NCBI GenBank assembly: GCA_044892505.1
Contig: CM097882.1
Coordinates: 385,268,001-385,332,000 of the forward strand
Direction: 5' to 3'
DNA from: Schmidtea nova
Taxonomy: Eukaryota
DNA: 64,000 nucleotides
How positions within the stretch are numbered: position 1 is the stretch's first letter; every line of letters starts with the position of its first letter. The translations under genes were made by a program, and so were the position numbers. Shown here one piece after another: positions 8,093 through 54,863 of the stretch. Below the pieces are notes generated by a model. The model worked only from the letters and a program-made list of their open reading frames with translations. It was not told the origin of the DNA and did not search any database.

Positions 8093-9154
8093 TCAAGTAA
8101 AATACGTGGTGCGCCCAATAAGTCGTGAGACTAAAATAGAAAGACTTAAGATATCAACAAAAAACTTTTTATTTAGAACAAACATGGTAAATAATTTCTC
8201 AAAATAATTTCCTTCTGCACTGACACAATTTTCCCAGCGAATAACGAGGTTTTTTGAATAACGACGGCGCAGATGCTTCTTAAGATGGTTAAACAGGAAA
8301 AAATTGGAGGGAGCCAAATCGGGGCTGTATGGTGGATGGGGAAGCAAATTGATCCTGCAACGCTCAATTTTGTCCAGGGAAACGCTGCTGGTGTGGATGG
8401 GAGCATTATCGTGTAAAAAATAGAGATCACACACTCTGCTCTTGTGTCGTGCCTTCCTTGCTTGCTGCACGATGCTGGAGTAATAAGAACTATTGATCTT
8501 CACGCTGGATTCAGCAAAGTCAGTCAGAATAATGCCATTGGTGTCCCAAAACACCGTCAGCATGAGAGCCTTTCGGTGGCAAGTTGAGGACCGCATTTTC
8601 AGTGAGCTGCTTTCTCCTGGCAGTTTTCATTCTTGAGACTCTCTTTTAGATTCGGGGACATAAAGAGACAACGGTGTCTCGTCCACAGTGATGATATTAT
8701 CAATGAAACGGTCTCCAACATTGGTCCTGATCTGCAGATTCTCCAAGTAGCATTCCAAGCGTCGTTGTCGTATTTCCACCGTTAAGAAGCGTGGCACAAA
8801 ACGGGAACATAGTTTTCGAATACCCCTTTCAGCGAGGAGAGTATGCACAGTGTCTTTGCTCACATTTAGACGGGTTGTGAGCTTTCTCGTCGTTATTTTT
8901 CTCTCGTTTTGCACGATTGTCTGCAGCTTTTGCGTTATTTTTTCATCAATTTCTGAGGGTCTTCCAGATCTTTCTTCGTCCACCACGGAGGTTCTACCAC
9001 TCTGAAAGTAATTGAACCAACGATAAACGGTTGCTGTGGATGGGCACTCTTGTTGGTAAACAACTTTCAGTTCAGAAAGAACCTCTTCTCTATTTTTTCC
9101 TTTCAGAAAGAGAAAGCGAATAACGCTATGTTATTGAATAGTTTCCAAAGGCAT
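8093..9154 (-). pseudogene. Mariner transposase pseudogene
   Basis: MPLETIQ*...VYRWF...DEERSGRP...CSRFVPR...TVDET...LHDNAP...HPPYSPDLAPSNFFLF. In-frame stops, third catalytic D changed to N, and an apparent C-terminal deletion. Confidence 0.92.
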
Positions 9155-17216: not shown

Positions 17217-18991
17217 GCACTTTTTTTTTGAAAATAAAAAAAATAGCACTTTTTTTGAATTAATAAAAAATATAGCACTTTTTTTGAATTAATAAAAAAT
17301 ATAGCACTTTTTTTGAAATAATAAAAAATATAGCACTTTTTTTGAAATAATAAAAAATATAGCACTTTTTTTGAATTAATAAAAAATATAGCACTTTTTT
17401 TGAAATAATAAAAAATATAGCACTTTTTTTGAAATAATAAAAAATATAGCACTTTTTTTGAAATAATAAAGCACACTTTAATAAAGCACACTTTATAAAT
17501 AGCACACTTTATAAAACAATAAAATAAATAGCACACTTTATAAAACAATAAAATAAATAGCGCATTTTAAAAAAGATACAGAAAGGATATATTTAACGAA
17601 GAAACAATTCTTAAAAAAGCCGAAAAATAAAGGTTTATTTCTATTTTTCTGCATATTCCCGGATTCTTTTAATTTTGGGTCTTCCTCGACCTTTTTTCAT
17701 TATAGGAGCTTTAAGATCCGATTTTTCAATGTTAAACGAACTCAAAGGTAAAATACTTTGGGAGTATTGTTTATAATAAGTTTCACTAAGATGAACATTT
17801 GCGACAAAACTAACGGGATCAACATAATTACTTTCTAAAACGGACCACATATGCGCACAAGGAATCCCCACATCTTCGGTTATTTTACATTCACATGTTT
17901 TGCTCTCTAAATCTACCTTGTATTTATTATCAACTAAAAAAACATCCTTGTTAGATCGTAAAATATTCATTAATCGACCTCTGGATATATTCTTGTTTAA
18001 AATGCTATAAGAATTTTTTGTTATTGGACTATCAAATTTCTTGCTTTTTCTCTCTGCATATTTTTCCATCGTATAATTATTTAGATGGATTATAAAGGTA
18101 GATATGTCTAAACTGATGAACTTCTTTATCGCAGAGTTTATAGACTCGGCTGGGTTATTGGTATTTTTCCCATATCTGGCAATGGGAAAAGCCGAGTTTG
18201 CCCAGGTCTCAACATTGCTTGCAATTAATCTATCATAGAAATTCAAGTTTTTTTCTTTGATACTGGCCATACAATCATCAAACTCTTTTTTGCAATACGT
18301 ATTGGCTGCTTTATAAAATAAACTTTGGCAAAGTTTATCTTTAAAATCTTTTTTTAAGTTTTTTCCAAAATGTCTTATGCATATGCTTTTAAACGCTTCC
18401 GGGGCTACTGTTCTTATTGCATTTGAAATTCCCTTATCTTTGTCGGAAATTATAATTGTTTTTTTGTTGTTTAGACCTAGAACAAGATTTAGTTCTTGTA
18501 AAAACCAGGTCCAACTAGCCGAACTCTCCCCAAAAAAATAAAACAACGAAAAAGTTAATACACCAAATATAAATTAATAAATGAATTCCTTATTTTTAAT
18601 TTTTAGGCTTTTTTATAATTATTTCTTCGTTCTATATATCCTTTTTAAATGTTCTATTTTTTTATTGTTTTATAAAGTGTGCTATATTTTTTATTATTTC
18701 AAAAAAAGTGCTATAATTTTTATTATTTCAAAAAAAGTGCTATATTTTTTATTATTTCAAAAAAAGTGCTATAATTTTTATTATTTCAAAAAAAGTGCTA
18801 TATTTTTTATTATTTCAAAAAAAGTGCTATATTTTTTATTATTTCAAAAAAAGTGCTATATTTTTTATTATTTCAAAAAAAGTGCTATATTTTTTATTAT
18901 TTCAAAAAAAGTGCTATATTTTTTATTATTTCAAAAAAAGTGCTATTTTTTTTATTTTTAAGAAAAAAAGTGCTATTTTTTTTAATGCCCC
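17217..18991 (-). mobile_element. Mutator-like element (MULE) with foldback-type tandem-repeat TIRs
   Basis: Left arm is an array of gcactttttttgaaataataaaaaatata and right arm is the inverted 29-bp array aaaaaaagtgctatattttttattatttc, ending ...taatgcccc (GGGG terminus). Left end lost in the N-gap; central MULE ORF. Confidence 0.85.
17641..18546 (-). CDS. MULE transposase, C-terminal part (DDE remainder, SWIM zinc finger, AT-hook)
   Basis: ESSASWTWFL...IISDKDKGISNA...CIRH...NTNNPAESINSAIK, SWIM CECKITEDVGIPCAH, AT-hook KGRGRPK. Uninterrupted for 301 codons, but the N-terminus and an ATG are missing. Confidence 0.85.
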   Translation of the reverse strand: MFYFFGESSASWTWFLQELNLVLGLNNKKTIIISDKDKGISNAIRTVAPEAFKSICIRHFGKNLKKDFKDKLCQSLFYKAANTYCKKEFDDCMASIKEKNLNFYDRLIASNVETWANSAFPIARYGKNTNNPAESINSAIKKFISLDISTFIIHLNNYTMEKYAERKSKKFDSPITKNSYSILNKNISRGRLMNILRSNKDVFLVDNKYKVDLESKTCECKITEDVGIPCAHMWSVLESNYVDPVSFVANVHLSETYYKQYSQSILPLSSFNIEKSDLKAPIMKKGRGRPKIKRIREYAEK

Positions 18992-20715: not shown

Positions 20716-22917
20716 TTCTAAAATTGGGATTGTTTGGTTAAATTTAAATTTTAAAAATTTAAATAAAAATTACACCACCCNNNNNNNNNNNNNNNNNNNN
20801 NNNNNNNNNNNNNNNNNNNNNNNNNNNNNNNNNNNNNNNNNNNNNNNNNNNNNNNNNNNNNNNNNNNNNNNNNNNNNNNNNNNNNNNNNNNNNNNNNNNN
20901 NNNNNNNNNNNNNNNNNNNNNNNNNNNNNNNNNNNNNNNNNNNNNNNNNNNNNNNNNNNNNNNNNNNNNNNNNNNNNNNNNNNNNNNNNNNNNNNNNNNN
21001 NNNNNNNNNNNNNNNNNNNNNNNNNNNNNNNNNNNNNNNNNNNNNNNNNNNNNNNNNNNNNNNNNNNNNNNNNNNNNNNNNNNNNNNNNNNNNNNNNNNN
21101 NNNNNNNNNNNNNNNNNNNNNNAATTAATATTATTACTAGTCTTTGGTATTCCATTATGTTATTATTGAATTCCCTCATTAATACATTCTTATATAATAG
21201 ATAAAATTATTTTTAAAATTTATTAACGACTTCACTGGATAAAACATTTTGCTCCACCTTTGGTCCCAAAGTGTCTATTAAATTCAAAACAAGAAAATCA
21301 TAATATGTAAATACATCATAACAATAAAAGCCTTCCATTTGAAATAATTTCGAAAAGAAATAATAAATAATTTATAAACTTATAATGTTGATGATTGACT
21401 TACTTAATTACGCTATTTAATTTTTATAAAACATAAACGAAAAGAAAAAAAATATTTTCTTGAATATAACCGGAGGATTTAATTAATTATGAAATGTTTT
21501 CATAATGAATTGCAATATATATGCTCCCATTTGTCATTAAGAGGGAAACAATAAATGCAAATTAATTAGTTAGGCTAATAATATTAATTTACGATTTCAA
21601 AAAAAGAAATTTAAAATTGACCAAAATTAAAATTATAACTGAAATTGATTATTGAAAAATTAAAATTTGACGAATTTATTTACGAATTATTAGGAAAGCA
21701 GACATTTTACATGTGAAAAGCAACAGCTGTTTTTAGTGTACAGTAGAAATAAGAACATTTTATAAAAATGAATTCTACAAAACCAAGCTTCACTAAAAAA
21801 GTACATAAATATTTGAAAATGATATTATTTTATTTTCCAAAATATATCAGATAAGGTTAATTGAATTCATATTAGAAATGATAAGTGAAGACAACCGAGA
21901 GTACAATAATCTAATACATATTATTGCATTTTCTAAAGTAAATTATGAAGGGTCTTATGTTAATATTTAACATTTTTGTAAAACATTTTTAAATAGTAAA
22001 AAGAAAAAATCGATTATAATTTTCATTATTTTCATATCAATTTATTATAATAACATCATTTAGTAAATTTTACAATATGTATTCTTTAACATTATTCTTC
22101 AATGAAAGTTATCAAAATCTCTTGAAATATTTGTCAACTTCAAAACTAAATACACAATAAATCAAAATATATTTTATATTAAAAATATAAACTGATTTAA
22201 ACTAATGCAATTTTCTCTCCAACCGGTAATTGATGATCATAAAAGTAATTGATACATTACAAGCGTTATCCGACAACAAATCGACAACAACATTGTATTG
22301 AAAAAAGTCATCGAAGCAATCGTAAAACTCAATAGAACGTGAATCGGATAATGTTTTCTTTAATATCGCTGCTTCCACTTGTTTTAGTATGCTCTACAAC
22401 TCGTATTCAGAGAAGACCAGATAAGAATAATACGAAATAAGTATTTAATAAAAATTTAATGCTTAATAATTATCTATAAACTCAAGCCTTAAATTTATTT
22501 TTAAATCATCAACATGAAATTTAATATCGGTTTTTTAAGGCCTTAAATTTCTATTTAATGTTTTAGATTTTGTTGTTTAAATCACTGGTGAATTTCTCAT
22601 GTTACAGATAAAATTATATATTTAATATCGAATTAAAATCTGTTAAATGAAAATGAAAGACTTTCTCTCCAAAATGTATATTTATGGCATTATTTTCCCT
22701 ATCAAATTATTTATTTAGGGTCCAGTCTTTCAAGTTTTACGAATTTTAGAAATATTTAAAAATTTCTTAAAGTCACGTCTTAGTTTAAATTAAGTGTAAA
22801 ATATGATATTAAAATAAATAATATTTGAAAAATATTTTTAAAAATACAATAAAATGCTTCAATAAAAGATCCTTCATTCTTTGACCATTTTTATACTGTC
22901 ACGTGTTTTTATTATTA

Positions 22918-23013
22918 TTATTATTAATATCAATAATTCCCATATTGGATGGCTATAGATCAAAATTTCTTTAAATAAGTACACAATATTTCGGCACAGC
23001 CTTTATCAAGTGT
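22918..23013 (-). repeat. Family B ~130-bp repeat copy (candidate variant hammerhead core at 22981-23013)
   Basis: Exact reverse complement of acacttgataaaggctgtgccgaaatattgtgt plus the shared gatctatag tail. Confidence 0.8.
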
Positions 23014-23014
23014 A

Positions 23015-23047
<33 letters not shown>

Positions 23048-23095
23048 ACAAAAAAAGCTTGTGATTTTCTTTGTGATACCCAGTGCAAATCCCCA

Positions 23096-23137
23096 ATAGC
23101 AGACTAGTTTCGAGCTTTTGGCTCTCATCAGTGCTAT
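23096..23137 (-). ncRNA. Minimal type I hammerhead ribozyme (identical inverted copy)
   Basis: Exact reverse complement of 23570-23611. Confidence 0.9.
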
Positions 23138-23569
23138 GCAGGAGACGCGAAAATTTCTCTCCGCGCCAGGTAAGTATAAAACAAAGTCGAAAGATTTTGT
23201 TATATACTATACCTGGTACACTGGATAAAACATCACTTGAATATGCAAGGTCCTACAGATAATCTGTAACTTGCAAACATGGCGTATGAATTTCATTTTC
23301 ACCTCTGCGCACTAAAAGTGTTCAACAGAAACTGTTTGCAAGCGCACCCGACTGCCTTAGCTTCATTATTTCAATTTTTTGAAATATCTTTTGAAAAAAA
23401 CATTTGTCGGATGACTTATTTGTTTTAAACAAAAAAAGCTTGTGATTTTCTTTGTGATACCCATATTCAAGTGATGTTTTATCCAGTGTACCAGGTATAG
23501 TATATAACAAAATCTTTCGACTTTGTTTTATACTTACCTGGCGCGGAGAGAAATTTTCGCGTCTCCTGC

Positions 23570-23611
23570 ATAGCACTGATGAGAGCCAAAAGCTCGAAAC
23601 TAGTCTGCTAT
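23570..23611 (+). ncRNA. Minimal type I hammerhead ribozyme
   Basis: ATAGCA-CTGATGA-GAGC caaaa GCTC-GAAA-CTAG-TC-TGCTAT: 6-bp stem I, full core, 4-bp stem II, palindromic A-CUAG-U stem III, GUC cleavage after 23605. Confidence 0.9.
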
Positions 23612-23918
23612 TGGGGATTTGCACTGGGTATCACAAAGAAAATCACAAGCTTTTTTTGTTTAAAACAAATAAGTTATNNNNNNNNNNNNNNNNNNNNNNN
23701 NNNNNNNNNNNNNNNNNNNNNNNNNNNNNNNNNNNNNNNNNNNNNNNNNNNNNNNNNNNNNNNNNNNNNNNNNNNNNNNNNNNNNNNNNNNNNNNNNNNN
23801 NNNNNNNNNNNNNNNNNNNNNNNNNNNNNNNNNNNNNNNNNNNNNNNNNNNNNNNNNNNNNNNNNNNNNNNNNNNNNNNNNNNNNNNNNNNNNNNNNNNN
23901 NNNNTGATCTTTTTTTAA

Positions 23919-23949
<31 letters not shown>

Positions 23950-25189
23950 GAATTAAAAAATTAATTTTTATTTTAAAAATACTGTTTTTATTTATTGTTA
24001 GCTTCAGAACATATTGTATTATTGTTCACAGATTAAATTTTTAATATAATTAAAGATAAAAATTTGTAAATGAAAATCTTTCCAATGTAGTATACNNNNN
24101 NNNNNNNNNNNNNNNNNNNNNNNNNNNNNNNNNNNNNNNNNNNNNNNNNNNNNNNNNNNNNNNNNNNNNNNNNNNNNNNNNNNNNNNNNNNNNNNNNNNN
24201 NNNNNNNNNNNNNNNNNNNNNNNNATATAATTTTTACAACTTTAGGCTATTGTGGAAAATTCGAGGTTACAAAAATAATTGACTCCTAAATATAAAAATG
24301 AAATAATTTATTAATTATAAATAACTATATATAATTAGCCAGTTGCATTTGTATTATTTTTATTAACAACATTCTAAAAATTGTCAGAATATACAGTCTA
24401 AAAGTTTTGTTCCATCCTTATATTAGAAATTTCCTAAATATCTATCAAATATGGGAAAACAAATATTTTTCTTATCTAATATTTATTTTACAAATAACTT
24501 TCAAATATGAATTAAAGTTTTACTAACACAATATTATTTCTTCGAAATTTATTTATATAATTATCCTTTACTTAATTTTCATAAAATTATCCTGAGATCT
24601 CAGTATTTAAGATGAAATACAAATATTAAAGTGTCAACAGTAAATAACACCAGAAATGAAACATGTGATCAAGAAAGATGACAATTTGTAACAATAAGAA
24701 GAGATTAATCCTAAATGTTGTTACATTATATTTCTGACTAACATTAAATTCATTAAACTTTATTTTTCTGATAATTGTTTGCTTTGGTGAATATTTTACA
24801 TTTTTAAATTTATGCATAATTTAATATCCATTATTATTGGTTGCTTATTATTCTTTAATCACTGTTCTGGTGTGTTTAAAAAATATTTAAATTTTCCCAA
24901 GGAAATACATTATTTAAACAAATATATTTAACGAAACAATTTCCAACTAATTTCTATGGAAACCAGTAAAAAAATATTTCTTTTTACACCACAGTTAAAA
25001 ACATTTCTGCATTAGCTTAATCGTCCAACCTACTGAAATATAATCTAAGATCAAAAATAATTCCGAACAAATCAATAATAATTTTTAATAATTTTAAACA
25101 AACAAAGCTTTGAATCATTTCTCCAAACTTTACGAGAGTTTGAAATCACAATTTTTGGTTGCTTTCTTCGACGAAGAAATAATTTCAAA

Positions 25190-26368
25190 TTACAATGTTC
25201 TTTTCGTTCTAATACTGGAGTCATAATTACTTTGACTTTTTGGTAGTCTTCTAGACGAACTGACTATTCTACAATCATCTGTCGATGAAATATTTAAATT
25301 CTGCAACGGATTCAATTCGGTGTATGTTTGACTTTTTCCCAAGGGCGTTAGAATGATTTTGGTTGAAGACTCTTTTTCATTTGATTGATTCACATTCTCT
25401 ATGTATTCCTGCAATAGAGGCCCCTCATCGACTGAGGACTTGTCATTGAATTGATTTGTGTTTGCTGTTACTTCTCGACTGTCGGAAACGAGATCTATTT
25501 TTATTTTAATATCCGTTGTATTATTTACAAAACGGTTAGCTGGTAATGAACTCTTAATGAAGAGGGGTTTATATACTGATCCTTCGTGTAATTTATTCCA
25601 AGGTAATTGCTCATTGTCTGGTTCAATAGATTTCATGTTAGCCGCAGTTGGCATACAATTTCGTGATTTCTGATTGGCTAAAGAACATTGACATCGCTTA
25701 TTAGATGGTTTACGGACATGAGTAAATTGAATTGGATAAGGTCTATCATAGTGCATAGGATAGAATAATTCCACGGGACATCTATTGAAATATTCACAGA
25801 AATTCTTTTGATTTTTATGATTTCTACGAACATTTGGAACAGAATGGCAATTGGAAAGACGCGGGTCATCACAGTGAAGCGAAGACTGATAGCTAATAGA
25901 ATCCAAACAATCTTCATATGTACAATCGTGAATATCTTCTTGTTCACTTTTTTGAAAAACAAAAACCGTGTTCTTTTTGAGACAAAAAATGATAATTGTT
26001 ATTGTTATTGATAGGGTTATGAATAAAAATATACATCCAATAATAATGGCACCGATAATTGTGCGATCCATTTTATTTGTATTGGAATCGATTTTCAAAC
26101 CATTTCTCGATTTTCCAACAAGCATTTGTCTCGGATAGCCTTGATTGAATGTTGGTTTATCGTACATATTATTATTATTTGTCAACGAGTTCTGATTGGT
26201 TGAATTTTCAATATTGATGAAACTGATTCTGGAATTTGAAAAATTGTGTTCATTGATCGATTTGAATCTTATTGTTCCATTCGTTGCTATTTGCAGGGAA
26301 AATTGAAGTTTGATTATTACTATTAAGCAGCAGAATTTTTGAATATTTTTTATCGTGTTTGATGGCAT
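25190..26368 (-). CDS. Intronless 392-aa predicted single-pass membrane protein of unknown family, nested antisense in the CEP78 intron
   Basis: 1179-nt ATG-to-stop ORF, visibly less AT-rich than its flanks. Short N-terminal hydrophobic stretch, N-glycosylation sequons (NGT, NFS, NST), strong TM segment TIIGAIIIGCIFLFITLSITITIIIFCL followed by KK, and a long polar tail. No family recognised. Confidence 0.75.
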   Translation of the reverse strand: MPSNTIKNIQKFCCLIVIIKLQFSLQIATNGTIRFKSINEHNFSNSRISFINIENSTNQNSLTNNNNMYDKPTFNQGYPRQMLVGKSRNGLKIDSNTNKMDRTIIGAIIIGCIFLFITLSITITIIIFCLKKNTVFVFQKSEQEDIHDCTYEDCLDSISYQSSLHCDDPRLSNCHSVPNVRRNHKNQKNFCEYFNRCPVELFYPMHYDRPYPIQFTHVRKPSNKRCQCSLANQKSRNCMPTAANMKSIEPDNEQLPWNKLHEGSVYKPLFIKSSLPANRFVNNTTDIKIKIDLVSDSREVTANTNQFNDKSSVDEGPLLQEYIENVNQSNEKESSTKIILTPLGKSQTYTELNPLQNLNISSTDDCRIVSSSRRLPKSQSNYDSSIRTKRTL

Positions 26369-38204: not shown

Positions 38205-38574
38205 GTTCGATANNNNNNNNNNNNNNNNNNNNNNNNNNNNNNNNNNNNNNNNNNNNNNNNNNNNNNNNNNNNNNNNNNNNNNNNNNNNNNNNNNNNNNNN
38301 NNNNNNNNNNNNNNNNNNNNNNNNNNNNNNNNNNNNNNNNNNNNNNNNNNNNNNNNNNNNNNNNNNNNNNNNNNNNNNNNNNNNNNNNNNNNNNNNNNNN
38401 TTTCAAAATATATTTATGGGAAATATATTTCGATGGTATAACCATCATCTTCAGTCCTAAAATTATCGATTATTTAAACAAATTATGCGGTCAAATATAA
38501 GTAACTACTATACGCATTGTGCATATTTAAAGAATGAAAAATAAAATATTTTTCTTCTTTCCCTCTCTTCTAAC

Positions 38575-38916
38575 TTGTTCAAGAATAAATCTGTTACACC
38601 TTCAGCCCTATGTTCGAATGTAGTTTATCAATTAAATTGTAATGGGTGTAATGCCACATACATTGGAGAGACTGCCCGTCATCTCTGTACTCGCATTCGT
38701 GAACATTCTAGACCTAATGGTGTCAGTAATATTTGTGAGCATGTTAAAAAAATCTGTAAAAATACAATTATCGATGTTAAAGATTTTAAAATTGTGAATA
38801 GAAATTTTTCCAGTTACTGGGAAAGAGTGGTTTGTGAAGCTTTGTATATCAAATCTTTGGATCCTAAGATTAATTTACAAAGTGAGACAACAAATCTATT
38901 GAGTGTATTTAATTAG
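38575..38916 (+). CDS. Penelope-type GIY-YIG endonuclease fragment
   Basis: NVVYQLNCNGCNATYIGETARHLCTRIREH...EHV...EALYIKSLDPKINLQ shows the VVY/YIG motifs, the CxxC..H..H zinc motif and the conserved R, E and N. The RT part is absent. Confidence 0.88.
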   Translation: MFKNKSVTPSALCSNVVYQLNCNGCNATYIGETARHLCTRIREHSRPNGVSNICEHVKKICKNTIIDVKDFKIVNRNFSSYWERVVCEALYIKSLDPKINLQSETTNLLSVFN

Positions 38917-39026
38917 AAGAGAGGGAAAGAAGAAAAATATTTTATTTTTCATTCTTTAAATATGCACAATGCGTATAGTAGTTACTTATATTTGACCACA
39001 TAATTTGTTTAAATAATCGATAATTT

Positions 39027-39069
39027 TAGGACTGAAGATGATGGTTATACCATCGAAATATATTTCCCA
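39027..39069 (+). ncRNA. Minimal hammerhead variant in pLTR (inverted copy at 38417-38459 on -)
   Basis: tagga-CTGAAGA-t-GATGG ttata CCATC-GAAA-TATA-TT-tccca: extra U after A9, palindromic A-UAUA-U stem III, short imperfect stem I. Confidence 0.65.
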
Positions 39070-39684
39070 TAAATATATTTTGAAATGGCAAATTGGTCTT
39101 TTTAATAATAAATTGCCATAATTTTTCAGATATAATTATAAAAATTAAATAATATAATTTGCTATGTAACAATGTTTGTCTGTCCGGATGTTACGCTTTT
39201 TAGGGGCGCTGATTGGCTGATTTTTCAATCAGAAAACTTGCAAATTCTTACACCTGTGTGTGTGACTATGATTGTTTTGATAAGTCAGTAGGATTCATCC
39301 AAAACAATATTAAGAATTTTTGAATTTAATTTTTGGTTTATATTAATTTTGAAAACATTAGTCATTTTTGACGGGATATTGCTAGTAATAATAATAGTAA
39401 AAATAATAATAATACACAATTAATATATTATATTATTAATAATGATTTTTTATTTATATTTTCGAATTACCAAGTTTTGGTTGATCTTAAGTTACAAATT
39501 TTATTGAATGAATTATTTATTGTCATTTATATCATTTAATTTTTTCATATTTGATCTCACTTTTTTCACTTTCAGAAATACTTAGAAATTTATATAGTGA
39601 ATAAATTTTCGACAGTGCTTTTTTCAAGTATGTACTTCAAAAAACTAAGTTGTAAATTCGTGTGCTATAAATAAGACTATATAC

Positions 39685-40960
39685 CAAAATATTGTTATTA
39701 AAATATATTGTTATTTCTATATATACACTGTGCGCGTTGAAATGCTTAAAGAATTTTGTGAAACTGCGGAAGTCGAATATCAGAAAATACTTGGATACAG
39801 TAAAATGCGCTGGTTAGCTCTTTCGCCAGCTGTCGAAAGAATTTTGAAAATATACGATCCTTTGAAATCCTACTTTCTATCACAGGATAAATGTCCTAGA
39901 ATTTTAGAAGAGTTTTTTGAAAAAGAATCTTCAAAAATTTGGCTAGAGTTTGTACATAATCAAGGAGCTCATTTTCAAAATGCTATAAAATTTATTGAAG
40001 GTGACAAAATTTCGGCAATCGAAGTAGCAAACGAAGTTAATAATTTAAAATTTCAGTGTCAAGAGCTGTTAGAAAATAATTTTCTTCCGTTAACTATCCG
40101 TAATAGTATAAACCAGCTAGAAGAACAAGGTGCAATAAATCGTACAGATATCATGAAGCACGTCAAAATGTTCTATAGTAACTGCATAGATTATTTAGAA
40201 GAGTGGACGGTACATTACAATGACATTGAACATTTTCATTGGATTACATTAAAACAAGAACTTAATTGGAATGATGTGCAAAAATCATTCGATCATATTA
40301 CTCAAAATTTCCCAGATAGTAATATTTCCGAAAATGATCTTTTTAATGAGGTATCATTATTAAAAAAAATATATTGATAAGGAAAAGATTCAATCTTGGG
40401 CAACAGAAAAAATCACAATAGAGAACAAATGGTTAGAAATATTTCATCATTTTGAAACAAACTATATTTCATACAATAATGCACTAAAGATTGTGGAATA
40501 CGCGCTGTCCTTACCAGGATCTAATGCTGCGACTGAACGCGTTATTTCTATGGTAAATAAAGTGGGGACATTAGAAAAATCACAATTAAGTGTTGAGACT
40601 TTGAAAGCCATTTTATGTGTGAAAAATAATTTAACAAATTCTTGTGAAAAATTTCATGACCTTTTAAACAACGACAACAATCTACTAAAAAAATTCACTC
40701 AAATGAGAAATATGCCAAAGAATAAAATATTGCTATATATAATTTTTTTTATAATTTTCATTTATTATAAGTATTTGTAAATTGTGCTTATGTTGAATTT
40801 AAATAAAATATATTACAATACTATTTTGCGTTCTATGAAATTTTTTATTGCTCCATATAGACCAAATTGTTAATTAATTACCACCTCCCCCCAACCCTCC
40901 CCTTCCTCGTCACCGGTTAATGGTTTCCCGCTTTACCAATGTTAAAATCTGGTCACCTTA
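39685..40960 (+). mobile_element. 5'-truncated hAT transposon with frameshifted transposase
   Basis: KMRWLAL...VERIL and the dimerisation domain LSLPGSNAATERVISMVN...LKAILCVK; frameshift in an A-run near 40370. Right TIR tctggtcacctta at 40948-40960; no left TIR found. Confidence 0.85.
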
Positions 40961-41215: not shown

Positions 41216-41320
41216 GTTGTATTTCAATTATATTTTAATAAATTATTTGTTACAAAATACTGCTAATGTTTAATGTTTAATTATATTTTTAAAAAAATAG
41301 TTCATTGGATATATCAAGTG

Positions 41321-41680
41321 ATTGAAATAATGAAGCTAAGGCAGTCAGGTGCGCTTGCAAACAGTTTCTGTTGAACACTTTTAGTGCGCAGAGGCGAAAA
41401 TAAAATTCATACGTATGTTTGCAAGTTATAGATTATCTGTAGGACCTTGCATATTCAAGTGATGTTTTATCCAGTGTACCAGGTATAGTATATAACAAAA
41501 ATCTTTCGACTTTCTTTTATACTTACCTGGCGCAGAGAGAAATCTTTGCGTCTCCTGCATATCACTGAAAGCTCGAAACTAGTTTGCTATTTGGGATTTG
41601 CACTGGGTATCAAAAAGCATTTCAAGCTTTACTTGTTTAAAACAAATAAGTCATTCGACAAATGTTTTTTCAAAAGATAT
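41321..41680 (+). mobile_element. Family A retrozyme-like copy with degenerate hammerhead
   Basis: Colinear with the 23-kb unit. The ribozyme reads atcactgaaagctcgaaactagtttgctat, with a deletion in the core/stem II and C17 changed to T. Confidence 0.85.
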
Positions 41681-43748
41681 ATATAAAAAAAGATATGTAT
41701 AAAGTAAACCTTGAAATCTATAACAGATGAAAAATAATAAAAATTCATTTACAATCAATATTAAGTAACAAATATTTTTAAAATTGATCAACTCCATTGT
41801 AAAATACTCATTAAAATTGAATTTGTTAGTTTGTTGTTCCAAGTTTGGTATCAATAAATTCCATATATTGTTAGGAGTTATTCAATATTAAGTAAAATCA
41901 GATTATCAATCAGTAAATGTAATTGTCTACTAAATTTAATAAAAATCAATATTTTTTAAAATATTTTGAACAAACTAAAATATTTTTCTTTATTTATGAA
42001 TAATGTAAATCATGGAATTGTATATTTTGTTTAAATTAATTAAAACAATCTTACAGAAAATACATAAAGAAATCCATAATAAAAGGTTTTTGATTATTAA
42101 ATATTAAGAAATACAATTACGACGAACAATATTGTAAACTTTAAGATGAACGATAATTATAGGTGACAAAATAAATATAAGCAATTTACATTTCAAATAG
42201 ATACTTAAATAAACATGTAAAAGATTTTATTAATAAAATGCGCCACTTATATAACCGTTTGCTAAAAGATTTGTCGCACAAATTTAAAATTAAGTTTTGT
42301 AAAGAATATATTAAAAACAAATTTCTATTCAACACAAATTTCCAGCACTTTCTTTTAAACACTTGAAAAAGACAGAATCGTATGTAAATGAAATTGAAAA
42401 TAGATCTAAGGGGAAGAAAATTAGAGGTTTTAATGATAGTGTCATTTCTTTTCTATATTAGATCGTTGAAAGTACACTTTTACATATAATTATAATTTTT
42501 TTGATTTAATAAAGTCAACTCTGATACAAAGACACAGTAAATTATGTGTTGGTTACATTTTGTAATGCTAATTTTATAGTTTTAATATTTTTTGACTTTT
42601 TCAATACTGATGTTTTCTTTTTTTGTAGCTTCTGGTTTTAAAAATTCAAAAACAATCGAAATTATTTGATGTGTTATACAACTGCTAAATTGTATAACCT
42701 TAGTTGTAGGTTAAACAAATTAAAATAAATATGAAAACTCACAATAAGTAAATATTATTTAATATAATATTTAATACTAGTTCGCTACATGCTGTCTTAT
42801 GGCGGCTATATACTTTTTTATGTTATATACTAGATTGCAAAAAGGAAAAAATAAATACAAAATTTTAATTGTAATTATCAAAATATTAAATCACTAAAAG
42901 GATTGCTACACTTATCAAAATTATTAATTTAAAAACCTGAAGAAAAATAACAAAAATATCATACTCTAAATATTTTCTTTAAAACTACATTTTTTGTGTA
43001 CTTATATCCATAAGAATAAAAAATATAAATAAAAATATTATAATATATTTTTGTTTTAATTTACTGCGTTATGTGTGGGTAGACAGACAAATTTATATTG
43101 TTATAATATAGTAAAATTATTAAAAATCTATTAAACTTCCTAATATTAAACATTATTAAAAAAAGTACTAACTTTTCGAAATATAGTCTTGGATAAATAA
43201 TAATTATACAATATACTAAAATTTAAAAAATATTTGTTTTATTTATTAATTTTAAAGAAATAATAAATAATAATGATTTATTAGAATTATTTTCACATTC
43301 AATAAGAATTGCGATCTACTTCAACAAATCTCCAGAGAATTGATGGCTACCTGAATAAATATACCATTTATTTATATTATGTGATACTATAGTATTAATA
43401 ATAAATAAAAAATTTAACATTTTTCTAAAGTTTTTCAAATCCATTTTAGTATTTTAGGCTCTTTTAAATTTATGGATACAGTTTTTTTCTATAATATAAT
43501 CTTTTGGGTTTTTTTTTCAATCATTTTGTTAAACTATTGAACAAAACATTTTTTATTAGGTACACGACATTTTGACTCGGTATGTATTGATAAGGACTGT
43601 ATCGAAATATCATGTACCTAACTACAAAAAAAATAAATCTTGATCTATATTCTTACAAAAATTAATAAAAAAATAACTAAATTTTTCCATAATTAAAAAA
43701 TAATCAATTATTTTAGAACGACCGAAAATATTAATCAAATGTTATTTA

Positions 43749-43985
43749 TCATAATTATCTTTTTTCACCTTTGATCTTTTTTTATTATTATTATCAATAA
43801 TTCTCATAATGACTATAGATCAAATTTTTTTTTTATAAACAATAACACAATATTTCGGCACAGCCTTTATCAAGTATGTATTTGATAAAGGCTTGTGCCG
43901 ATAAAGGCTGTGCCGAAATATTGTGTTATTGTTTATAAAAAAAAAATTTGATCTATAGTCATTATGAGAATTATTGATAATAATA
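43749..43985. repeat. Family B inverted pair
   Basis: Two opposed copies meet at tcaagtatgtatttgataaag, with a small internal duplication of ataaaggctgtgccg. Confidence 0.85.
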
Positions 43986-45472
43986 AATGTTATTTGTTAA
44001 TTAGAAATGAAATATTTTTGATTAATAAAAACAAAAACTTTATTAACATATCCTTTGTTTGGATTTTATCTAGCTAAAAAATTCGAAATATGATGATTCT
44101 CCTAAGATTTCATAGTTTCCTTTAGGGTAATGGTCCTGAATTGGACCAGTTAGAGTAAAACTACTGTTCTGTCGTAATCTGGTTGAAACAAATTCGGAAA
44201 AAAAGTAATGAACTTACAGTCAACTGATTATCAAATAGACTATAATTGTAATAAAAGTTCTATTTAAGAGACATTTATCTTAATTTTGACCATTATTCTC
44301 TTTTATTAGACAGATTTACTTTTCGTTTTTTAAATAAGATTGTTATTAAACAATTGTTTCTTAAAATAATTAAGCTAGCAAACACTAATTTAGGAAATAT
44401 CTATTTATACCTATAGATAGAAGCATAGATGAATGTTCATTCAGTTCATCAGTCTACACAACAACAGAGCCCGTGAATGGTCGAGGTTGTGTGCAAATAA
44501 TACACATTCATTCTTCTGTCCGATGCTAATTAACATATTTTGATAAAAATGCCAACTGATAAAGTATGCAAATTATAAATAAAATTTAATTAATTCCATG
44601 GTCAGTTTTAAAACAACACATAATTAGGGGATTTTTCTATACTAAAAGTAGAGAAGATTCTGTTAATTATGAAATATTTTATTCAAATGCAATTTCAAGA
44701 TGTTTGAAACATTGATATCTATTAATCATATATTAAAAATAGAAAAATTAAAAAAATATTTGTTGCTATTCGATAAAAATTTAAAAAGTTTTATATTTTT
44801 GTATTGAATCTAGAATTATATATTTCTATTGGTATTCGGACCATTTCTCTCTAGACTAATTCTCCCGGATAAAATGAAGTTACTAAATTATATTTATTTT
44901 TTCATAACAATAGACAATAAATTAATCGAAATGTAACTAGAGTTTTCTTGAATTTTTCTGTAAATATTTCGACTAAGATAATAGAAACATTTTTATGCAA
45001 ACATGTTATAAAATAAACATTTATATTTATTGGATCTTAATTTTTATTCATATTCTGAAGTAACACTACATACTTTTTATTAGAAAAAAGGATGATGATA
45101 TAATGCGTGTAAATTTTTCATTAACTGAGAGAATTTTGTCATAAGGGATATTGTTCTGAAGGAGAAAATAATTTAATGATAGTTATCATGGACTAATCTC
45201 TAGAATCAGCGTATATAACCAAATAATTCAAAGAAAACAAATTGAGGTTTTCAGAAGAGTAAAGTCTATAATACATTAACGCAATTTAAATAAGTAATAA
45301 TCTCTGTATACCTAATATAAACTAATAGACACTAGTTTAAATAAATAATAAAGCTATCTATGGGAATATATGAAGGTTTCTTAATTTATTTTAATTCTCA
45401 TATATTTTAATTTTATAAATATTTCCGATATTTGTTTCAAAATAATATTTTAACATTATTTTCATTTAATAG

Positions 45473-47280: not shown

Positions 47281-47500
47281 AATTATCTTTTTGTTTCACC
47301 TTTGATCTCTTTTATTTTATATAAATAATTTCCATAATGGTATGACTATAGATCAATTTTTTTAAAAGTACACAATATTTCGGTACAGCCTTTATCAAGT
47401 GTGAAATATACACTTGATAAAGACTGTTCCAAAATATTGTGTACTTGTTTAAAAAGAATTTTAATCTATAGTCATACCATTATGGAAATTATTGATATAA
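47281..47500. repeat. Family B inverted pair (more diverged)
   Basis: ...tcaagtgt gaaatat acacttgataaagac... with substitutions in the right-hand copy. Confidence 0.8.
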
Positions 47501-48639
47501 AGAAAAACACTTATTTTAATTGTAGACTTAACCTGTCATGGTAATCCTTTTTATTAATTAAATAGTCTTTTATTCTTTAGGCCGTTTGTGTTATCTGTTA
47601 TACAGTATATCAGTGTTTCTTAATCATTTTGCTCCTGGCCAATGTCGGCAAAGATTCTTTCTATGGTACATGAACGTATTGTAAAAGTAACTTCTAAATT
47701 AAGGAAAATAAAAGGTAATTTATATAAAACTTTTAATTTTGAGTTAAAAACCATGACGAATTGCACTATTAAACAGAAAGGCGAATCGTCAATTAGTTAA
47801 TAAATAAATAATCCATTTTCTTCATCAGCTCCCCTATGCCAATAGATTTTATTAAATTTCGATTTAAACATGTTAGATTGTAAAAATTTACATACAAAAA
47901 AGGTTTGTCCATTCCATGTAGGTCCTACTATTTGATAAACGGCATAATTTCTTAATTCCATTTTTAATTAATTAATTATTAATATAGTTTATATTTGTTA
48001 ATTGATCAAAAATGTTAAGCAACATCAAATATAAAGGTAAATGTTTACTTCTCGGTATGATATTCCGAATGGAAAACCGAATTATGTTCTAGACAGAAAC
48101 GGCAAGCACCCCATCATATTGATATTAAAAATAATAAAAATTTGTTTTTATTAATTGTTGTTCATTGATTGTGAAAATTTGAAAATGTCTAAAAGTAAGA
48201 GTATTTTTATTTTTATATTAATTTATTCTTTAGTTTATTTGTTTGAAGTAGTTCTCACAAAGATTCAAGAACTATACCCAAAAATCAAAAGAAAAATTTT
48301 GAATATTGTGCTCTCGAGTTGTTAGTACACAAAATATACAATTACACGGTGATCAATATCGAAGAGTTGCTCGAAAAGTAATATGATATGATGATTGGGG
48401 CTGGCATCAAGTGCGTCGAAAATTGCGTTGTTTGTAAAGACTCAATGAGAGTTTCATGTACCGATGGATGCTCTTGTTGTCATGAATTTAAACGTCAACT
48501 ATCAGTGCAAATTTAGGTTGCTGAAATACGAAAGGCATATTATAATGCCTTTAGAATACAAAATAATTGCCGATGATTTTTATTGAATAAAGATTTTATT
48601 TATAAAATTATATGTATGGATGAATTCTACTGTGAGATT

Positions 48640-49115
48640 AATATAGTTGCAGGTGATACAGACTCTTTCTTCTTAGAGGTTAAGAATTGTAATTTGGATC
48701 TTCTTTTGTTGGCTATGGTTATATATATAGGCTTTTAGATACATCGAATTATGACCCAAATCATCACTTGTACTCGAAAAACCTTGATTCTGTATTTAGA
48801 AAATTCAAAGACGAGAATAAAGGACTCAAGTTCAAGGAATGTGTTTTTCTTAGGTCCAAGTGCTATAGTCTTTTAGGTAAAAAAGAGAGCATTAAGGCTA
48901 AGGATATAATATTGAAGGGTACTGACCTGAAACATCAGTCGTACCTGGATTGTTATAATAATAATTCAATAATTTCTGTTGATCAGTCAAGAATAGTTAG
49001 TAACTATCACTAATTCTTTACTAATAAATTTTGTAAAATTTATTTGACTAACCTTGATGACAAAACACTTTGGATTTCTAAAAATGAGAGTCTTACTTAT
49101 GGACATTATAGGAGA
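48640..49115 (+). pseudogene. Protein-primed family B DNA polymerase C-terminal remnant (Polinton/Maverick or adintovirus-like)
   Basis: AGDTDSFF (motif C), KFKDENKG...FLRSKCYS...KAK...LKHQSYLDC...QSRI, DDK...LTYGHY; frames disrupted. Confidence 0.75.
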
Positions 49116-51330: not shown

Positions 51331-51721
51331 TGATCTGATTGCTATCATCACGCAAATCAAAAAATTTAATCACACTTCAATACTTGACAGAATGTAGCAT
51401 AATTTGACAAAAAATTGAAAATGAGTTCACCCAAGCTGCTATACAGGTTCATATTAAAAAGATATATTTTTGTAACGATAGATAATATATTATGACTTAA
51501 TTAAAATATTGTTAAAGTACTAATAATTTTTATGAGGTAGTCCGGGTACTTACTGAACGAAATACGTATTTATATTTTATGTAATATTAAATAGTAAGTA
51601 AACTTTTCAAATAAATGGAAGAACATGTTTTTAAAAATACGTTTTTGCAATATATATTTTGAATTTTTTTCAACCATCATTAGTTGAAATTTAACAGTTT
51701 TTTAACTAATAAATCTCTAAC

Positions 51722-52022
51722 TCCATTTGGTTTGTGTTCTGAACTCGTGTATCAATTTGCATGTAATGGGTTTAATGCCACATACACTGAAGAGACTACC
51801 CGTATTTACCCGAGTTCTGGAGAATTGTCGACTGAATGGGTTGACTTGTAGTTATAATTTTAGGAAATGCGACAGTAAAAAATAGATATCTCTGATTTTA
51901 AGATTATTGCATAAAGTTTCAGTAATTATTTGGAACTAGTAACTTGTGATTCATTGTTGATAAGATCTTTTAATCCAAAAATCAATGATCACTCTACGGA
52001 TATTTCAAATGTATTTAAGTAA
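51722..52022 (+). pseudogene. Second Penelope-like GIY-YIG remnant
   Basis: PFGLCSELVYQFACNGFNATYTEETTR...DISDFKII...SFNPKINDHST...VFK* is colinear with the 38575 ORF. Confidence 0.75.
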
Positions 52023-52349
52023 CTGGATATCGCATGTTTTGAAGTGTGTTTTGGTATAACTATGTTATTTTTATGTTATTAATTTTTTTCCATTTATTGA
52101 ATTTTTTGTTGTTATGTTTTCTTTTCACTTTTTAAAAATATTTATTTTAGGTAATTAATTTGAAAAAATATTATTCTTAAATAATTTATTATAAAGAAAA
52201 TATGTTGATAATATTATGATAATCATTATTCATTAATTTCTAGTTATTATTTGTTATCTTAATTACTAGTCTGATATTCAATCGAAATATATAGCGTTTT
52301 TTTAAATATACTTGGCTTTTTAGTTATATATATATATATATATATATAT

Positions 52350-52972: not shown

Positions 52973-53038
<66 letters not shown>

Positions 53039-54776: not shown

Positions 54777-54863
54777 ACACTTGATAAAGGCTGTGCCGAA
54801 ATATTGTGTTATTGTTTATAAAAAAAATTTTGATCTATAGTCATTATGAGAATTATTGATAAT

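What the first reader, a model, noticed from the sequence alone, without database searches (positions are those of the whole stretch)
23044..23677. Retrozyme-like 381-nt non-coding unit with an intact minimal hammerhead ribozyme
Seen: a non-coding unit repeats with a 381-nt period and terminal redundancy, is joined to an inverted partial copy, has a diverged third copy at 41321-41680, and contains a textbook type I hammerhead with a palindromic CUAG stem III. Known: minimal dimer-cleaving hammerheads mark Penelope-like elements and non-LTR retrozymes, whose monomers of a few hundred nt form circular RNAs. Inference: this is a self-cleaving, probably circularising, non-autonomous retro-RNA family mobilised by Penelope enzymes, possibly undescribed in this lineage.
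Basis: partly seen in the sequence, partly recalled or inferred. Interest (0 to 1): 0.9.

Follow-up and report, generated by a model that had tools for sequence, protein, structure and literature searches.

The report
Hammerhead-ribozyme retroelement unit, Penelope-style insertion
A 381-base non-coding repeat carrying an intact hammerhead self-cleaving RNA motif sits in this AT-rich genome in the insertion pattern typical of Penelope-like retroelements; it is a good new example of the already described animal "retrozymes", not a new kind of element.

Summary
A 381-nt non-coding unit (23044-23424) is present as 1.10 units. It is joined head-to-head to a 5'-truncated inverted copy (23462-23677) that runs into an N gap. 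A third, circularly permuted copy of about 90% identity lies at 41308-41689. Both inverted arms carry a complete type I hammerhead, far beyond chance (0.003 expected per window). It has the canonical metazoan design, not the "minimal" Penelope type: helix I 6 bp, helix II 4 bp, and a self-complementary ACUAGU helix III that implies action as a dimer. The ribozyme-sense RNA is predicted to be highly self-paired (z -6.8). The insertion shows the published hallmarks of Penelope-like elements (PLE): a partial tandem or "tail", an adjacent inverted 5'-truncated copy, a (TTA)n target and assembly breaks. Two PLE endonuclease remnants lie in the same window, with unrelated flanks. All copies read through both the cleavage site and the unit junction, so their templates were multimeric or circular.

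Not shown: self-cleavage, RNA circles, arrays of two or more units, genome copy number, or the host species. The third copy's ribozyme is not intact.

Verdict: new member of a known kind (non-LTR retrozyme / non-autonomous PLE derivative). Interest is moderate to low.

The parts
23015..23046 (.). (TAT/TTA)n microsatellite, left flank of the insertion
   Evidence: TRF: period 3, 10.7 copies, 100% matches
23044..23463 (-). Left copy, 1.10 units, ribozyme-sense on the minus strand. It is one full 381-nt unit (23044-23424) preceded at its 5' end by a 39-nt partial unit or 'tail' (23425-23463). Its 3' end abuts the microsatellite.
   Evidence: Direct repeat with spacing 381; BLAST of the unit against the window; alignment A1
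23080..23149 (-). Hammerhead ribozyme of the left copy. Core starts at 23131; predicted cleavage between 23102 and 23101 on the minus strand.
   Evidence: Rfam HH9 24.1 bits, E 0.0017, below the gathering score of 52; descriptor scan
23462..23677 (+). Inverted, 5'-truncated copy, ribozyme-sense on the plus strand. It is joined head-to-head to the left copy, passes the unit junction at 23663/23664 and runs into the N gap.
   Evidence: Inverted repeats I1 and I2; BLAST 202/202 identity
23558..23627 (+). Hammerhead ribozyme of the right copy: outer helix I, 2x2 internal loop, 6-bp helix I, CUGAUGA, 4-bp helix II with a 5-nt loop, GAAA, ACUAGU helix III. Predicted cleavage after C23605.
23678..23904 (.). 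N run (gap or masked) that hides the rest of the right copy. Not filled.
23915..23948 (.). (TTA)n microsatellite, right flank of the insertion
   Evidence: TRF: period 3, 11.3 copies
41308..41689 (+). Third copy, about 1.0 unit, circularly permuted (unit 345->1 then 381->332). It has 23 substitutions and 14 unit positions absent. Its hammerhead is not intact: one deletion and three substitutions within the 58-nt ribozyme span.
38566..38916 (+). Penelope-like element remnant: C-terminal GIY-YIG endonuclease domain only. The frame is open for 113 codons. It is broken by one 5' truncation (no RT part), with no internal stop or frameshift.
   Evidence: Pfam GIY-YIG E 7e-4. Of 3311 relatives, the best is 66% identical, and the match lies at the C-terminus of proteins that carry RVT_1.
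38401..38572 (-). Inverted repeat arm left of the PLE remnant; it runs into the N gap 38213-38400. I read it as an inverted 5'-truncated copy of the PLE 3' non-coding end. It carries a hammerhead-core-like motif at 38428-38454.
   Evidence: 99.4% identical to 39085-38914; pattern hit
38914..39085 (+). Non-coding stretch just downstream of the PLE endonuclease frame (putative 3' UTR / pLTR part). It carries a hammerhead-core-like motif at 39032-39058. No similarity to the 381-nt unit.
51687..52016 (+). Second, decayed PLE endonuclease remnant: 5'-truncated, 5 in-frame stops, no frameshift detected, 42% identical to the first.

Best explanation
The 381-nt unit is a non-coding, non-autonomous retroelement of the animal 'non-LTR retrozyme' kind, that is, a hammerhead-bearing derivative or parasite of Penelope-like elements.

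Proposed cycle:

1. Source loci with at least two head-to-tail units are transcribed.
2. Two hammerheads pair through their self-complementary ACUAGU helix III. Each cuts after its GUC, releasing a 381-nt monomer.
3. A host tRNA ligase can close the monomer into a highly self-paired circle.
4. A PLE reverse transcriptase/endonuclease nicks AT-rich DNA (here a TTA microsatellite) and starts copying at an internal site of a circular or uncleaved multimeric RNA. It runs past one full turn, which gives the 39-50-nt terminal redundancy. It sometimes leaves an inverted 5'-truncated copy at the 5' end.

The window holds the products of two such insertions. One is young: its arms are identical and both hammerheads are intact. 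One is old: about 6% substitutions plus indels, and its hammerhead is no longer intact.

Shown here: the unit, its permutations, the intact ribozyme motif, the predicted fold, the insertion architecture, and PLE remnants nearby.

Inferred: transcription, cleavage, circles, and which enzyme copies the RNA.
For: 1. Unit and junction. The period is 381 nt, and the junction of unit end to unit start is seen three independent times: 23424/23425, 23663/23664 and 41640/41641. The repeating unit is therefore 381 nt with no room for an ORF.

2. Ends of the copies. In ribozyme-sense numbering the 5' ends are at positions 343, 180 and 37, and the 3' ends at 381 and 50. None lies at the cleavage site (323/324), and all copies read through it. 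The templates were therefore circles or uncleaved multimers, not cleaved linear monomers.

3. Hammerhead. The core is complete, helix I is 6 bp plus an outer 4 bp, helix II is 4 bp, and the helix III hexamer can form a 6-bp intermolecular duplex. Chance expectation is 0.003 per window. This is the 'canonical metazoan type I' design of PMC4209133, and its dimer requirement matches the axolotl retrozymes (PMC7229834).

4. Fold. The ribozyme-sense RNA has a minimum free energy of -120.7 kcal/mol, z -6.8; folded as a circle, -115.2 kcal/mol with 71% of bases paired. Unit GC is 37% against about 23% around it.

5. Insertion architecture. It matches the PLE hallmarks listed in PMC8557442: partial tandem or 30-40-bp tail, an inverted 5'-truncated copy at the 5' end, microsatellite bias and assembly trouble. 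It also matches the ATT / AT-rich cleavage preference and internal initiation of reverse transcription reported in PMC11167929.

6. PLEs in this genome. Two endonuclease remnants lie in the window, and the first shows the same head-to-head inverted architecture.

7. Literature. Size, GC below 50%, non-coding nature and co-occurrence with PLEs match the definition of non-LTR retrozymes (PMC7229834). A 2026 preprint derives them from PLE pLTRs (10.64898/2026.07.22.740005).
Against: - No array of two or more units is present in the window, and each copy holds a single hammerhead. None of these loci could release a monomer as assembled.
- Only three copies are visible, and the two intact ribozymes are the two arms of one event.
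- The third copy has lost its ribozyme. Its substitutions give no covariation support for the fold: of 15 predicted pairs touched, 7 are kept and 8 are lost.
- The best Rfam hit (HH9, 24.1 bits) is well below the gathering score of 52, and there is nothing at gathering level.
- No relative of the unit was found in the metagenome contigs or among predicted proteins.
- No PLE reverse transcriptase sequence occurs anywhere in the window.
- The PLE non-coding end seen here is unrelated to the unit.
- There are no expression data.
- The inverted structure borders an N gap, so part of it could be mis-assembled.
Confidence: 0.65

Rival explanations
1. The unit is an internally deleted or solo non-coding end (pLTR) of an autonomous PLE family of this genome. 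It is copied passively as linear RNA and has no circular-RNA life of its own. The hammerhead is simply inherited from the parent pLTR.
For: Hammerheads lie in the pLTRs of PLEs (PMC4209133). Retrozyme families are sister to pLTRs in Xenopus (10.64898/2026.07.22.740005). The insertion architecture is that of PLEs. PMC4209133 also notes paired hammerheads 100-700 bp apart on opposite strands near truncated PLEs, as here. A third copy with a dead ribozyme shows no selection on the motif after insertion.
Against: The unit closes on itself after 381 nt at three junctions, with no coding sequence. The only PLE non-coding end visible in the window is unrelated and carries a different, PLE-type core motif. 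The ribozyme here is the canonical type with helix III, which the literature ties to retrozyme repeats rather than to metazoan PLE pLTRs (PMC4209133, PMC7229834). The 3' ends differ between copies.
Confidence: 0.15
2. It is a hammerhead-bearing satellite DNA. Its dispersed, permuted copies arose at the DNA level, by excision of circles from tandem arrays and re-integration or by recombination, without reverse transcription.
For: Permuted copies slightly longer than one unit are what re-integrated circles from a tandem array would give. Classic hammerhead satellites of about 330 bp exist in newts and salamanders (PMC7229834).
Against: No long array is seen in the window. An inverted 5'-truncated partner and a microsatellite/ATT target are hallmarks of PLE-type target-primed reverse transcription, not of DNA-circle integration (PMC8557442, PMC11167929).
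Confidence: 0.1
3. The head-to-head arrangement and the 1.10-unit length are partly assembly artefacts: a longer tandem array collapsed, or a false inverted join next to the gap.
For: The arms are identical (202/202). The structure ends in an N run, and another gap follows 190 nt later. PLE insertions are known to break short-read assemblies (PMC8557442). The exact redundancy of 39 nt is in the range of assembler word sizes (my inference).
Against: It is not a simple fold-back: 216 nt of unique unit sequence separate the arms. After unit position 1 the right arm continues into the unit junction, not into the microsatellite that follows the left arm (I2). The independent third copy confirms the unit and its junction. 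The PLE remnant at 38.4-39.1 kb has the same architecture.
Confidence: 0.1

Closest known systems
Non-LTR retrozymes of animals (Cervera & de la Pena 2020, PMC7229834)
   Same: Non-coding unit within the 170-400-nt range. One type I hammerhead per unit. GC below 50%. Predicted highly self-paired RNA. Found in a genome that also holds PLEs.
   Different: Published retrozymes are defined by tandem arrays (dimers up to tens of units) and by detected circular RNAs. Here at most 1.10 units are assembled in a row, and no RNA evidence exists. The sequence is unrelated to anything I could retrieve.
Axolotl/newt retrozymes (satellite 2 type, HHR_Amex1; PMC7229834)
   Same: Unit of about 330-350 nt. The hammerhead has a one-base-pair helix III and a palindromic loop, is weak as a monomer and active as a dimer.
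   Different: Those are vertebrate elements present in around 10^5 copies in arrays. This one is in a very AT-rich, unidentified, probably invertebrate genome, and is seen as dispersed copies.
Hammerheads in the pLTRs of Penelope-like elements (min-HHR; Cervera & de la Pena 2014, PMC4209133)
   Same: Type I topology, dimer logic and association with PLE-style insertions. Paired motifs on opposite strands a few hundred bases apart are also reported there.
   Different: Metazoan PLE min-HHRs have a long helix II (7-8 bp) with a bulged base, a short helix I, and little or no helix III. This motif has 6-bp helix I, 4-bp helix II and a palindromic helix III. The PLE remnant in this window carries a separate motif of the PLE kind.
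Rfam Hammerhead_HH9 (RF02275)
   Same: The best-matching covariance model. Core, helix I with internal loop, helix II and its A-rich loop all align.
   Different: The score of 24.1 bits is far below the gathering score of 52. Helix III is shorter by 5 model positions. HH9 is an intronic amniote family, not a repeat unit.
Plant LTR retrozymes (PMC4918200)
   Same: Non-autonomous retroelements whose hammerheads release RNAs that are circularised.
   Different: The plant elements have type III hammerheads inside long terminal repeats, a primer binding site, a polypurine tract and 4-bp target duplications, and they depend on Gypsy-type enzymes. None of that applies here.

Membership tests
Hammerhead ribozyme, type I (canonical metazoan design, PMC4209133) | Conserved core: CUGANGA, GAAA, and a U-H cleavage dinucleotide (here GUC) | tested here: met
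   Exact core at 23576-23605 (+) and its mirror on the minus strand
Hammerhead ribozyme, type I (canonical metazoan design, PMC4209133) | Helix I about 6 bp, open-ended; helix II about 4 bp, closed by a loop | tested here: met
   Helix I is 6 bp plus a 2x2 internal loop plus 4 bp. Helix II is 4 bp with a 5-nt loop. These are the only descriptor hits in the window, with 0.003 expected.
Hammerhead ribozyme, type I (canonical metazoan design, PMC4209133) | Helix III of 1-2 bp capped by a 2-4-nt palindromic loop, allowing a two-ribozyme active form | tested here: met
   ACUAGU is self-complementary; duplex with itself is 6 bp, -6.2 kcal/mol
Hammerhead ribozyme, type I (canonical metazoan design, PMC4209133) | Self-cleavage activity | not testable with these tools
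   No RNA data or assay available
Rfam Hammerhead_HH9 (RF02275) | Score at or above the family's gathering threshold (52 bits) | tested here: not met
   24.1 bits, E 0.0017 in a 781-nt search; no hit at gathering level in the window. I do not file it under HH9.
Non-LTR retrozyme (PMC7229834) | Non-coding unit of about 170-400 nt with one type I hammerhead, GC below 50% | tested here: met
   381 nt, 37% GC, stops in all frames
Non-LTR retrozyme (PMC7229834) | Head-to-tail tandem repeats (two or more units) in the genome | tested here: inconclusive
   Only 1.10 and about 1.0 units are contiguous. The unit junction is seen three times. The right copy runs into an N gap, and arrays may be collapsed in the assembly. 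The rest of the genome was not available.
Non-LTR retrozyme (PMC7229834) | RNA predicted to be stable and highly self-paired | tested here: met
   -120.7 kcal/mol, z -6.8, none of 100 shuffles as stable; circular fold -115.2 kcal/mol, 71% paired. There is no covariation support.
Non-LTR retrozyme (PMC7229834) | Expressed as linear and circular monomer RNAs | not testable with these tools
Non-LTR retrozyme (PMC7229834) | Co-occurrence with PLEs in the same genome | tested here: met
   Two GIY-YIG endonuclease remnants whose relatives carry RVT_1 upstream. No intact or RT-bearing PLE lies in the window.
pLTR of a coding Penelope-like element | The repeat flanks, or is contiguous with, an RT / GIY-YIG reading frame | tested here: not met
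   The unit closes on itself after 381 nt. The nearest PLE coding remnants lie about 15 kb from the main locus and about 2.4 kb from the third copy, with hAT sequence in between.
pLTR of a coding Penelope-like element | Sequence similarity to the non-coding end of a PLE of the same genome | tested here: inconclusive
   No similarity to the one PLE non-coding end in the window. Other PLE families of the genome could not be examined.
PLE-type insertion (PMC8557442, PMC11167929) | Partial tandem or 30-40-bp tail, adjacent inverted 5'-truncated copy, AT-rich or microsatellite target | tested here: met
   39-nt partial unit at the 5' end; head-to-head inverted copy truncated at unit position 202; (TTA)n on both sides
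tRNA-derived SINE | tRNA-like head | tested here: not met
   ARAGORN finds no tRNA-like sequence in the window

The most novel reading that the evidence does not exclude
This locus may be a preserved integration footprint showing that a retrozyme with a canonical (not PLE-type) hammerhead is copied by PLE machinery from a circular or multimeric RNA. The signs are:

- more than one turn copied;
- a tail;
- a head-to-head 5'-truncated partner;
- an ATT-microsatellite target;
- all copies reading through the cleavage site.

It would come from a very AT-rich lineage whose proteins have almost no relatives in public data. That would be direct, locus-level evidence for a link so far argued mainly from co-occurrence and pLTR phylogeny.
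Probability: 0.35. Interest if true: 0.5.

Novelty: new member of a known kind. Interest (0 to 1): 0.3.

Why it matters
Retrozymes are an abundant natural source of small circular RNAs in animals, and how they spread is still argued mostly from indirect evidence. A young, well-preserved insertion with PLE hallmarks, sitting next to PLE remnants that carry a different hammerhead type, is a useful case for the view that retrozymes are non-autonomous partners of Penelope-like elements. It also supports the view that their templates are circles or multimers. For annotation, it flags a repeat family and a ribozyme that Rfam thresholds miss. It does not open a new category.

Tried and rejected
- **Rfam at gathering level** over the whole window: no hit. 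At E-value level over the whole window the hammerhead drops out, and only sub-threshold microRNA-like hairpins appear.
- **Chance motif:** rejected.
- **Coding unit:** rejected. A search with the longest open stretch of the unit (23464-23676) found no relative among 5.8 billion clusters.
- **tRNA-derived SINE:** no tRNA-like sequence.
- **Relatives elsewhere:**
  - A unit-specific 24-mer gave 0 hits in the metagenome contigs.
  - A pattern for the ribozyme geometry gave 6 metagenome loci with unrelated flanks and 0 viral contigs. None is a relative of the unit. Rfam finds nothing in L002-L004, the three of them I scanned.
- **Covariation between the unit and the third copy:** no signal and low power.
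- **Co-folding two ribozyme copies by minimum free energy** was uninformative. I used the explicit helices instead.
- **Organism identification:**
  - The closest PLE relatives are unnamed metagenome proteins.
  - The 392-aa host ORF has one unnamed relative.
- **Simple hairpin artefact:** rejected, because the arms are separated by 216 nt and the right arm continues into the unit junction.
Full report
**Setting**

The window is very AT-rich, about 23% GC in 2-kb bins. It contains eight N runs of 129-434 nt and is crowded with transposon remnants:
- a mariner/Mos1-like transposase at 8096-9130 (-);
- a MULE at 17644-18573 (-);
- hAT at 39649-40777 (+);
- a pogo-type DDE_1 at 62130-62471 (-).

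It is not human-like. I could not identify the organism:
- the closest relatives of its PLE fragment are unnamed metagenome proteins;
- a 392-aa host ORF has a single unnamed relative at 60% identity;

PLEs with a C-terminal endonuclease are reported only from animals, apart from one transfer to conifers (PMC8557442). An invertebrate animal is therefore the likely host. This is an inference.

**Observation check**

The unit is 23044-23424, 381 nt, 37% GC.
- Its first 39 nt recur exactly at 23425-23463, with spacing 381 (D2).
- From 23462 the sequence turns round. 23462-23663 is the reverse complement of unit 1-202 at 202/202 identity.
- It then continues for 14 nt into what follows the unit's start in a head-to-tail arrangement, not into the microsatellite (I2). 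It stops at the N run 23678-23904.
- A third copy at 41308-41689 matches unit 345->1 and then 381->332, with about 90% identity (alignment A1).
- No frame of the unit is open.
- No other copy exists in the window.

**Orientation and anatomy**

I number the unit on the ribozyme-sense strand: h1 = 23424 and h381 = 23044.

| Copy | Strand | Extent in h numbering |
|---|---|---|
| Left | minus | h343-381, then h1-381; ends at (TAA)n |
| Right | plus | h180-381, then h1-14, then the gap |
| Third | plus | h37-381, then h1-50 |

The junction h381|h1 therefore occurs three times in three differently bounded copies. The predicted cleavage site, h323|324, is read through in all three. Copies made from ribozyme-cleaved linear monomers would begin and end at h324 and h323, and none does. 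The templates were either uncleaved multimers or religated circles. This is the strongest thing the window says about the life cycle.

**The ribozyme**

On the plus strand at 23562-23622, and mirrored on the minus strand in the left copy, the parts are:
- an outer helix of 4 bp, a 2x2 internal loop, and helix I of 6 bp;
- CUGAUGA;
- helix II of 4 bp with a 5-nt A-rich loop;
- GAAA;
- the hexamer ACUAGU;
- C17, with cleavage predicted after 23605.

The hexamer is self-complementary. Within one molecule it could close only a 2-nt loop. Between two molecules it forms a 6-bp helix (-6.2 kcal/mol).

This is the arrangement PMC4209133 calls the canonical metazoan type I hammerhead: helix I 6 bp, helix II 4 bp, helix III 1-2 bp with a 2-4-nt palindromic loop, active as a dimer. 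It is not the 'min-HHR' of metazoan PLE pLTRs, which has a long helix II with a bulged base, a short helix I and no helix III.

Statistics:
- The best Rfam model is HH9 at 24.1 bits, against a threshold of 52. I do not file the motif under HH9.
- The core pattern gives 2 matches against 0.13 expected.
- The full descriptor gives only these two hits against 0.003 expected per simulated window.

**Predicted RNA fold**

- The ribozyme-sense 381-mer folds at -120.7 kcal/mol, z -6.8, with none of 100 shuffles as stable.
- The complementary strand gives z -4.8.
- Folded as a circle, the unit gives -115.2 kcal/mol with 71% of bases paired.
- Helices I and II of the hammerhead persist as a local branch in the global fold.

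The third copy gives no covariation support. It has 23 substitutions that touch 15 predicted pairs; 7 still pair, 8 do not, and one is a double change. Two sequences give little power, and the third copy looks like a decaying insertion. Its ribozyme span has one deletion and three substitutions and is not intact.

**Insertion architecture**

The main locus lies between two runs of the same trinucleotide repeat, 23015-23046 and 23915-23948. I read this as one (TTA)n microsatellite split by the insertion.

Read on the minus strand, the locus is: an inverted 5'-truncated copy, then a 39-nt partial unit, then a full unit, then the microsatellite.

PMC8557442 lists as PLE hallmarks partial tandems that form pLTRs, a 30-40-bp tail at one end, an inverted 5'-truncated copy immediately at the 5' end, a bias for microsatellites, and trouble in shotgun assemblies. 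PMC11167929 shows for one PLE a cleavage preference for AT-rich DNA with an ATT motif, and initiation of reverse transcription at an internal site of the RNA. The locus matches each point.

The third copy's extra 50 nt at its 3' end fits the 'tail on either side'. The unit's 3' boundary (…UUUAA next to TAA repeats) suggests priming by microhomology. This is an inference.

**PLEs in the window**

- The frame 38575-38913 (+) is a GIY-YIG endonuclease domain (Pfam E 7e-4, just under the cut-off).
- Against 1.84 billion representative proteins it has 3311 relatives, the best at 66% identity. The match always lies at the C-terminus of proteins that carry RVT_1 upstream. That is the canonical PLE architecture.
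- It is a 5'-truncated remnant with an otherwise open frame.
- It is bracketed by 172-nt inverted repeats at 38401-38572 and 38914-39085, 99.4% identical, and the left one runs into an N gap. I read this as a forward truncated copy plus an inverted, more truncated copy of its 3' non-coding end. That is the same head-to-head pattern as at the finding.
- These repeats carry a second hammerhead-core-like motif: CUGAAGA, a bulged base, a 5-bp helix II, then GAAA. Taken together with the two in the unit's arms, the window has 4 such core matches against 0.17 expected. Its helix I is weak, and the minimum-free-energy fold does not adopt the hammerhead. I call it a candidate only.
- A second endonuclease remnant lies at 51687-52016 (+). 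It has 5 in-frame stops, is read in one frame, and is 5'-truncated.
- No reverse transcriptase remnant occurs anywhere in the window.
- The PLE non-coding end has no similarity to the 381-nt unit.

**Searches elsewhere**

- A unit-specific 24-mer has no exact match in the metagenome contigs.
- A pattern for the ribozyme's geometry found six metagenome loci with different helix I and II sequences and unrelated flanks. One of them, L002, is a 727-nt direct repeat.
- The same pattern found none in the viral contigs.
- The unit's longest open stretch has no relative among predicted proteins.

The family could not be followed beyond the window. Copy number and arrays remain unknown.

**How it most likely works**

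Steps shown by the sequence:
- a 381-nt non-coding unit that closes on itself;
- an intact dimer-type hammerhead;
- a strongly self-paired predicted RNA;
- copies longer than one unit with different ends, all reading through the cleavage site;
- PLE-type insertion footprints in an ATT repeat;
- PLE remnants nearby.

Steps inferred from the literature on this class (PMC7229834, PMC4209133, PMC8557442, PMC11167929):
- transcription of head-to-tail source copies;
- pairing of two hammerheads through helix III, and cleavage after GUC;
- closure of the monomer by a tRNA ligase;
- target-primed reverse transcription by a PLE enzyme that starts internally on a circle or multimer.

As assembled, none of the three copies could itself release a monomer, because each has one ribozyme. 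They are products, not sources. A transcript across the main locus would instead fold its two arms into a 202-bp hairpin.

**Rivals**

- *(a) A deleted or solo pLTR of a coding PLE with no circular RNA stage.* The window cannot exclude this for PLE families it does not contain. However, the unit closes on itself, the ribozyme is of the retrozyme type, and the one visible PLE end is unrelated.
- *(b) Satellite DNA dispersed through DNA circles.* This explains the permutation but not the inverted truncated partner or the target.
- *(c) Assembly artefact.* A collapsed array is quite possible, and would strengthen the retrozyme reading. A false inverted join is unlikely, because the arms are 216 nt apart, the right arm follows the unit junction, and the third copy independently confirms the unit.

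**Comparison and novelty**

The element works like, and on most testable criteria is, a non-LTR retrozyme. The two criteria that define the class experimentally, tandem arrays and circular RNAs, could not be met or tested here.

The class is reported from cnidarians, molluscs and amphibians, and bioinformatically from rotifers, flatworms, annelids, crustaceans and insects (PMC7229834). [quoted passage not shown]

This is therefore a new member of a known kind. Its modest added value is the clean PLE-type footprint on a canonical-hammerhead unit.

- I did not fill or look up any N run.
- The permuted third copy was compared piece by piece through position look-ups only.
- I propose no mobilisation test.
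- Possible slip: my first notebook entry names which parts of the third copy's hammerhead are altered.

Noticed in passing
window 22911-23030; also 43779-43986, 47316-47507, 52347-52442, 52849-53308, 54759-55009, 56987-57066, 60347-60506: A dispersed repeat of about 100 nt lies directly left of the finding and occurs at least 15 times in the window. Most copies form back-to-back inverted pairs that make palindromes of about 200 nt. Two of these give sub-threshold mir-31 matches on both strands (45 bits against a threshold of 51). This looks like a MITE-like hairpin family, often next to (TA)n or (TAT)n runs. At the finding only one half is present, so the hammerhead element may sit at or near the centre of such a palindrome.
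   Followed up: partly
window 38401-39085: A PLE endonuclease-only remnant (open frame of 113 codons) is bracketed by 172-nt inverted repeats that are 99.4% identical. Each repeat carries a hammerhead-core-like motif of the PLE kind (38428-38454 minus strand, 39032-39058 plus strand). The left repeat runs into an N gap. Helix I is weak and the minimum-free-energy fold does not adopt a hammerhead.
   Followed up: partly
window 38566-38913 and 51687-52016: The two PLE remnants begin within about five residues of the same point of the PLE protein, at the start of the endonuclease domain. No reverse transcriptase remnant exists anywhere in the window. Possible readings are a shared truncation point, an endonuclease-only derivative family, or an exon boundary. 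Unexplained.
   Followed up: partly
window 17309-17465 and 18695-18938: Short repeats spaced 29 nt apart lie on both sides of the MULE transposase frame (17644-18573) in opposite orientation. They were seen only as 12-nt BLAST matches. They are possibly subterminal repeats of the MULE.
   Followed up: no
window 25190-26368 (-): An open frame of 392 codons has one predicted membrane-spanning stretch, no Pfam family, and a single relative (60% identity, Logan assembly) among 5.8 billion protein clusters. It is a lineage-restricted gene and shows how poorly this lineage is sampled.
   Followed up: partly
L002 (OBQE01000158.1) 1-1284: This metagenome contig consists of a 727-nt direct repeat (positions 1-300 are identical to 728-1027). 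Each repeat carries a hammerhead of the same geometry as the finding, but with different helix I and II sequences. It has no Rfam hit and no long ORF. It is possibly another retrozyme-like or circular element.
   Followed up: partly
window 23678-23904, 24096-24224, 38213-38400: N runs lie directly against both head-to-head inverted structures: the hammerhead unit and the PLE remnant. This fits the published remark that PLE-type insertions break assemblies.
   Followed up: no
window 48693-49010 (+): An open stretch of 106 codons looked by eye like part of a DNA polymerase, but it has no Pfam match at E 0.001. Left unassigned.
   Followed up: partly
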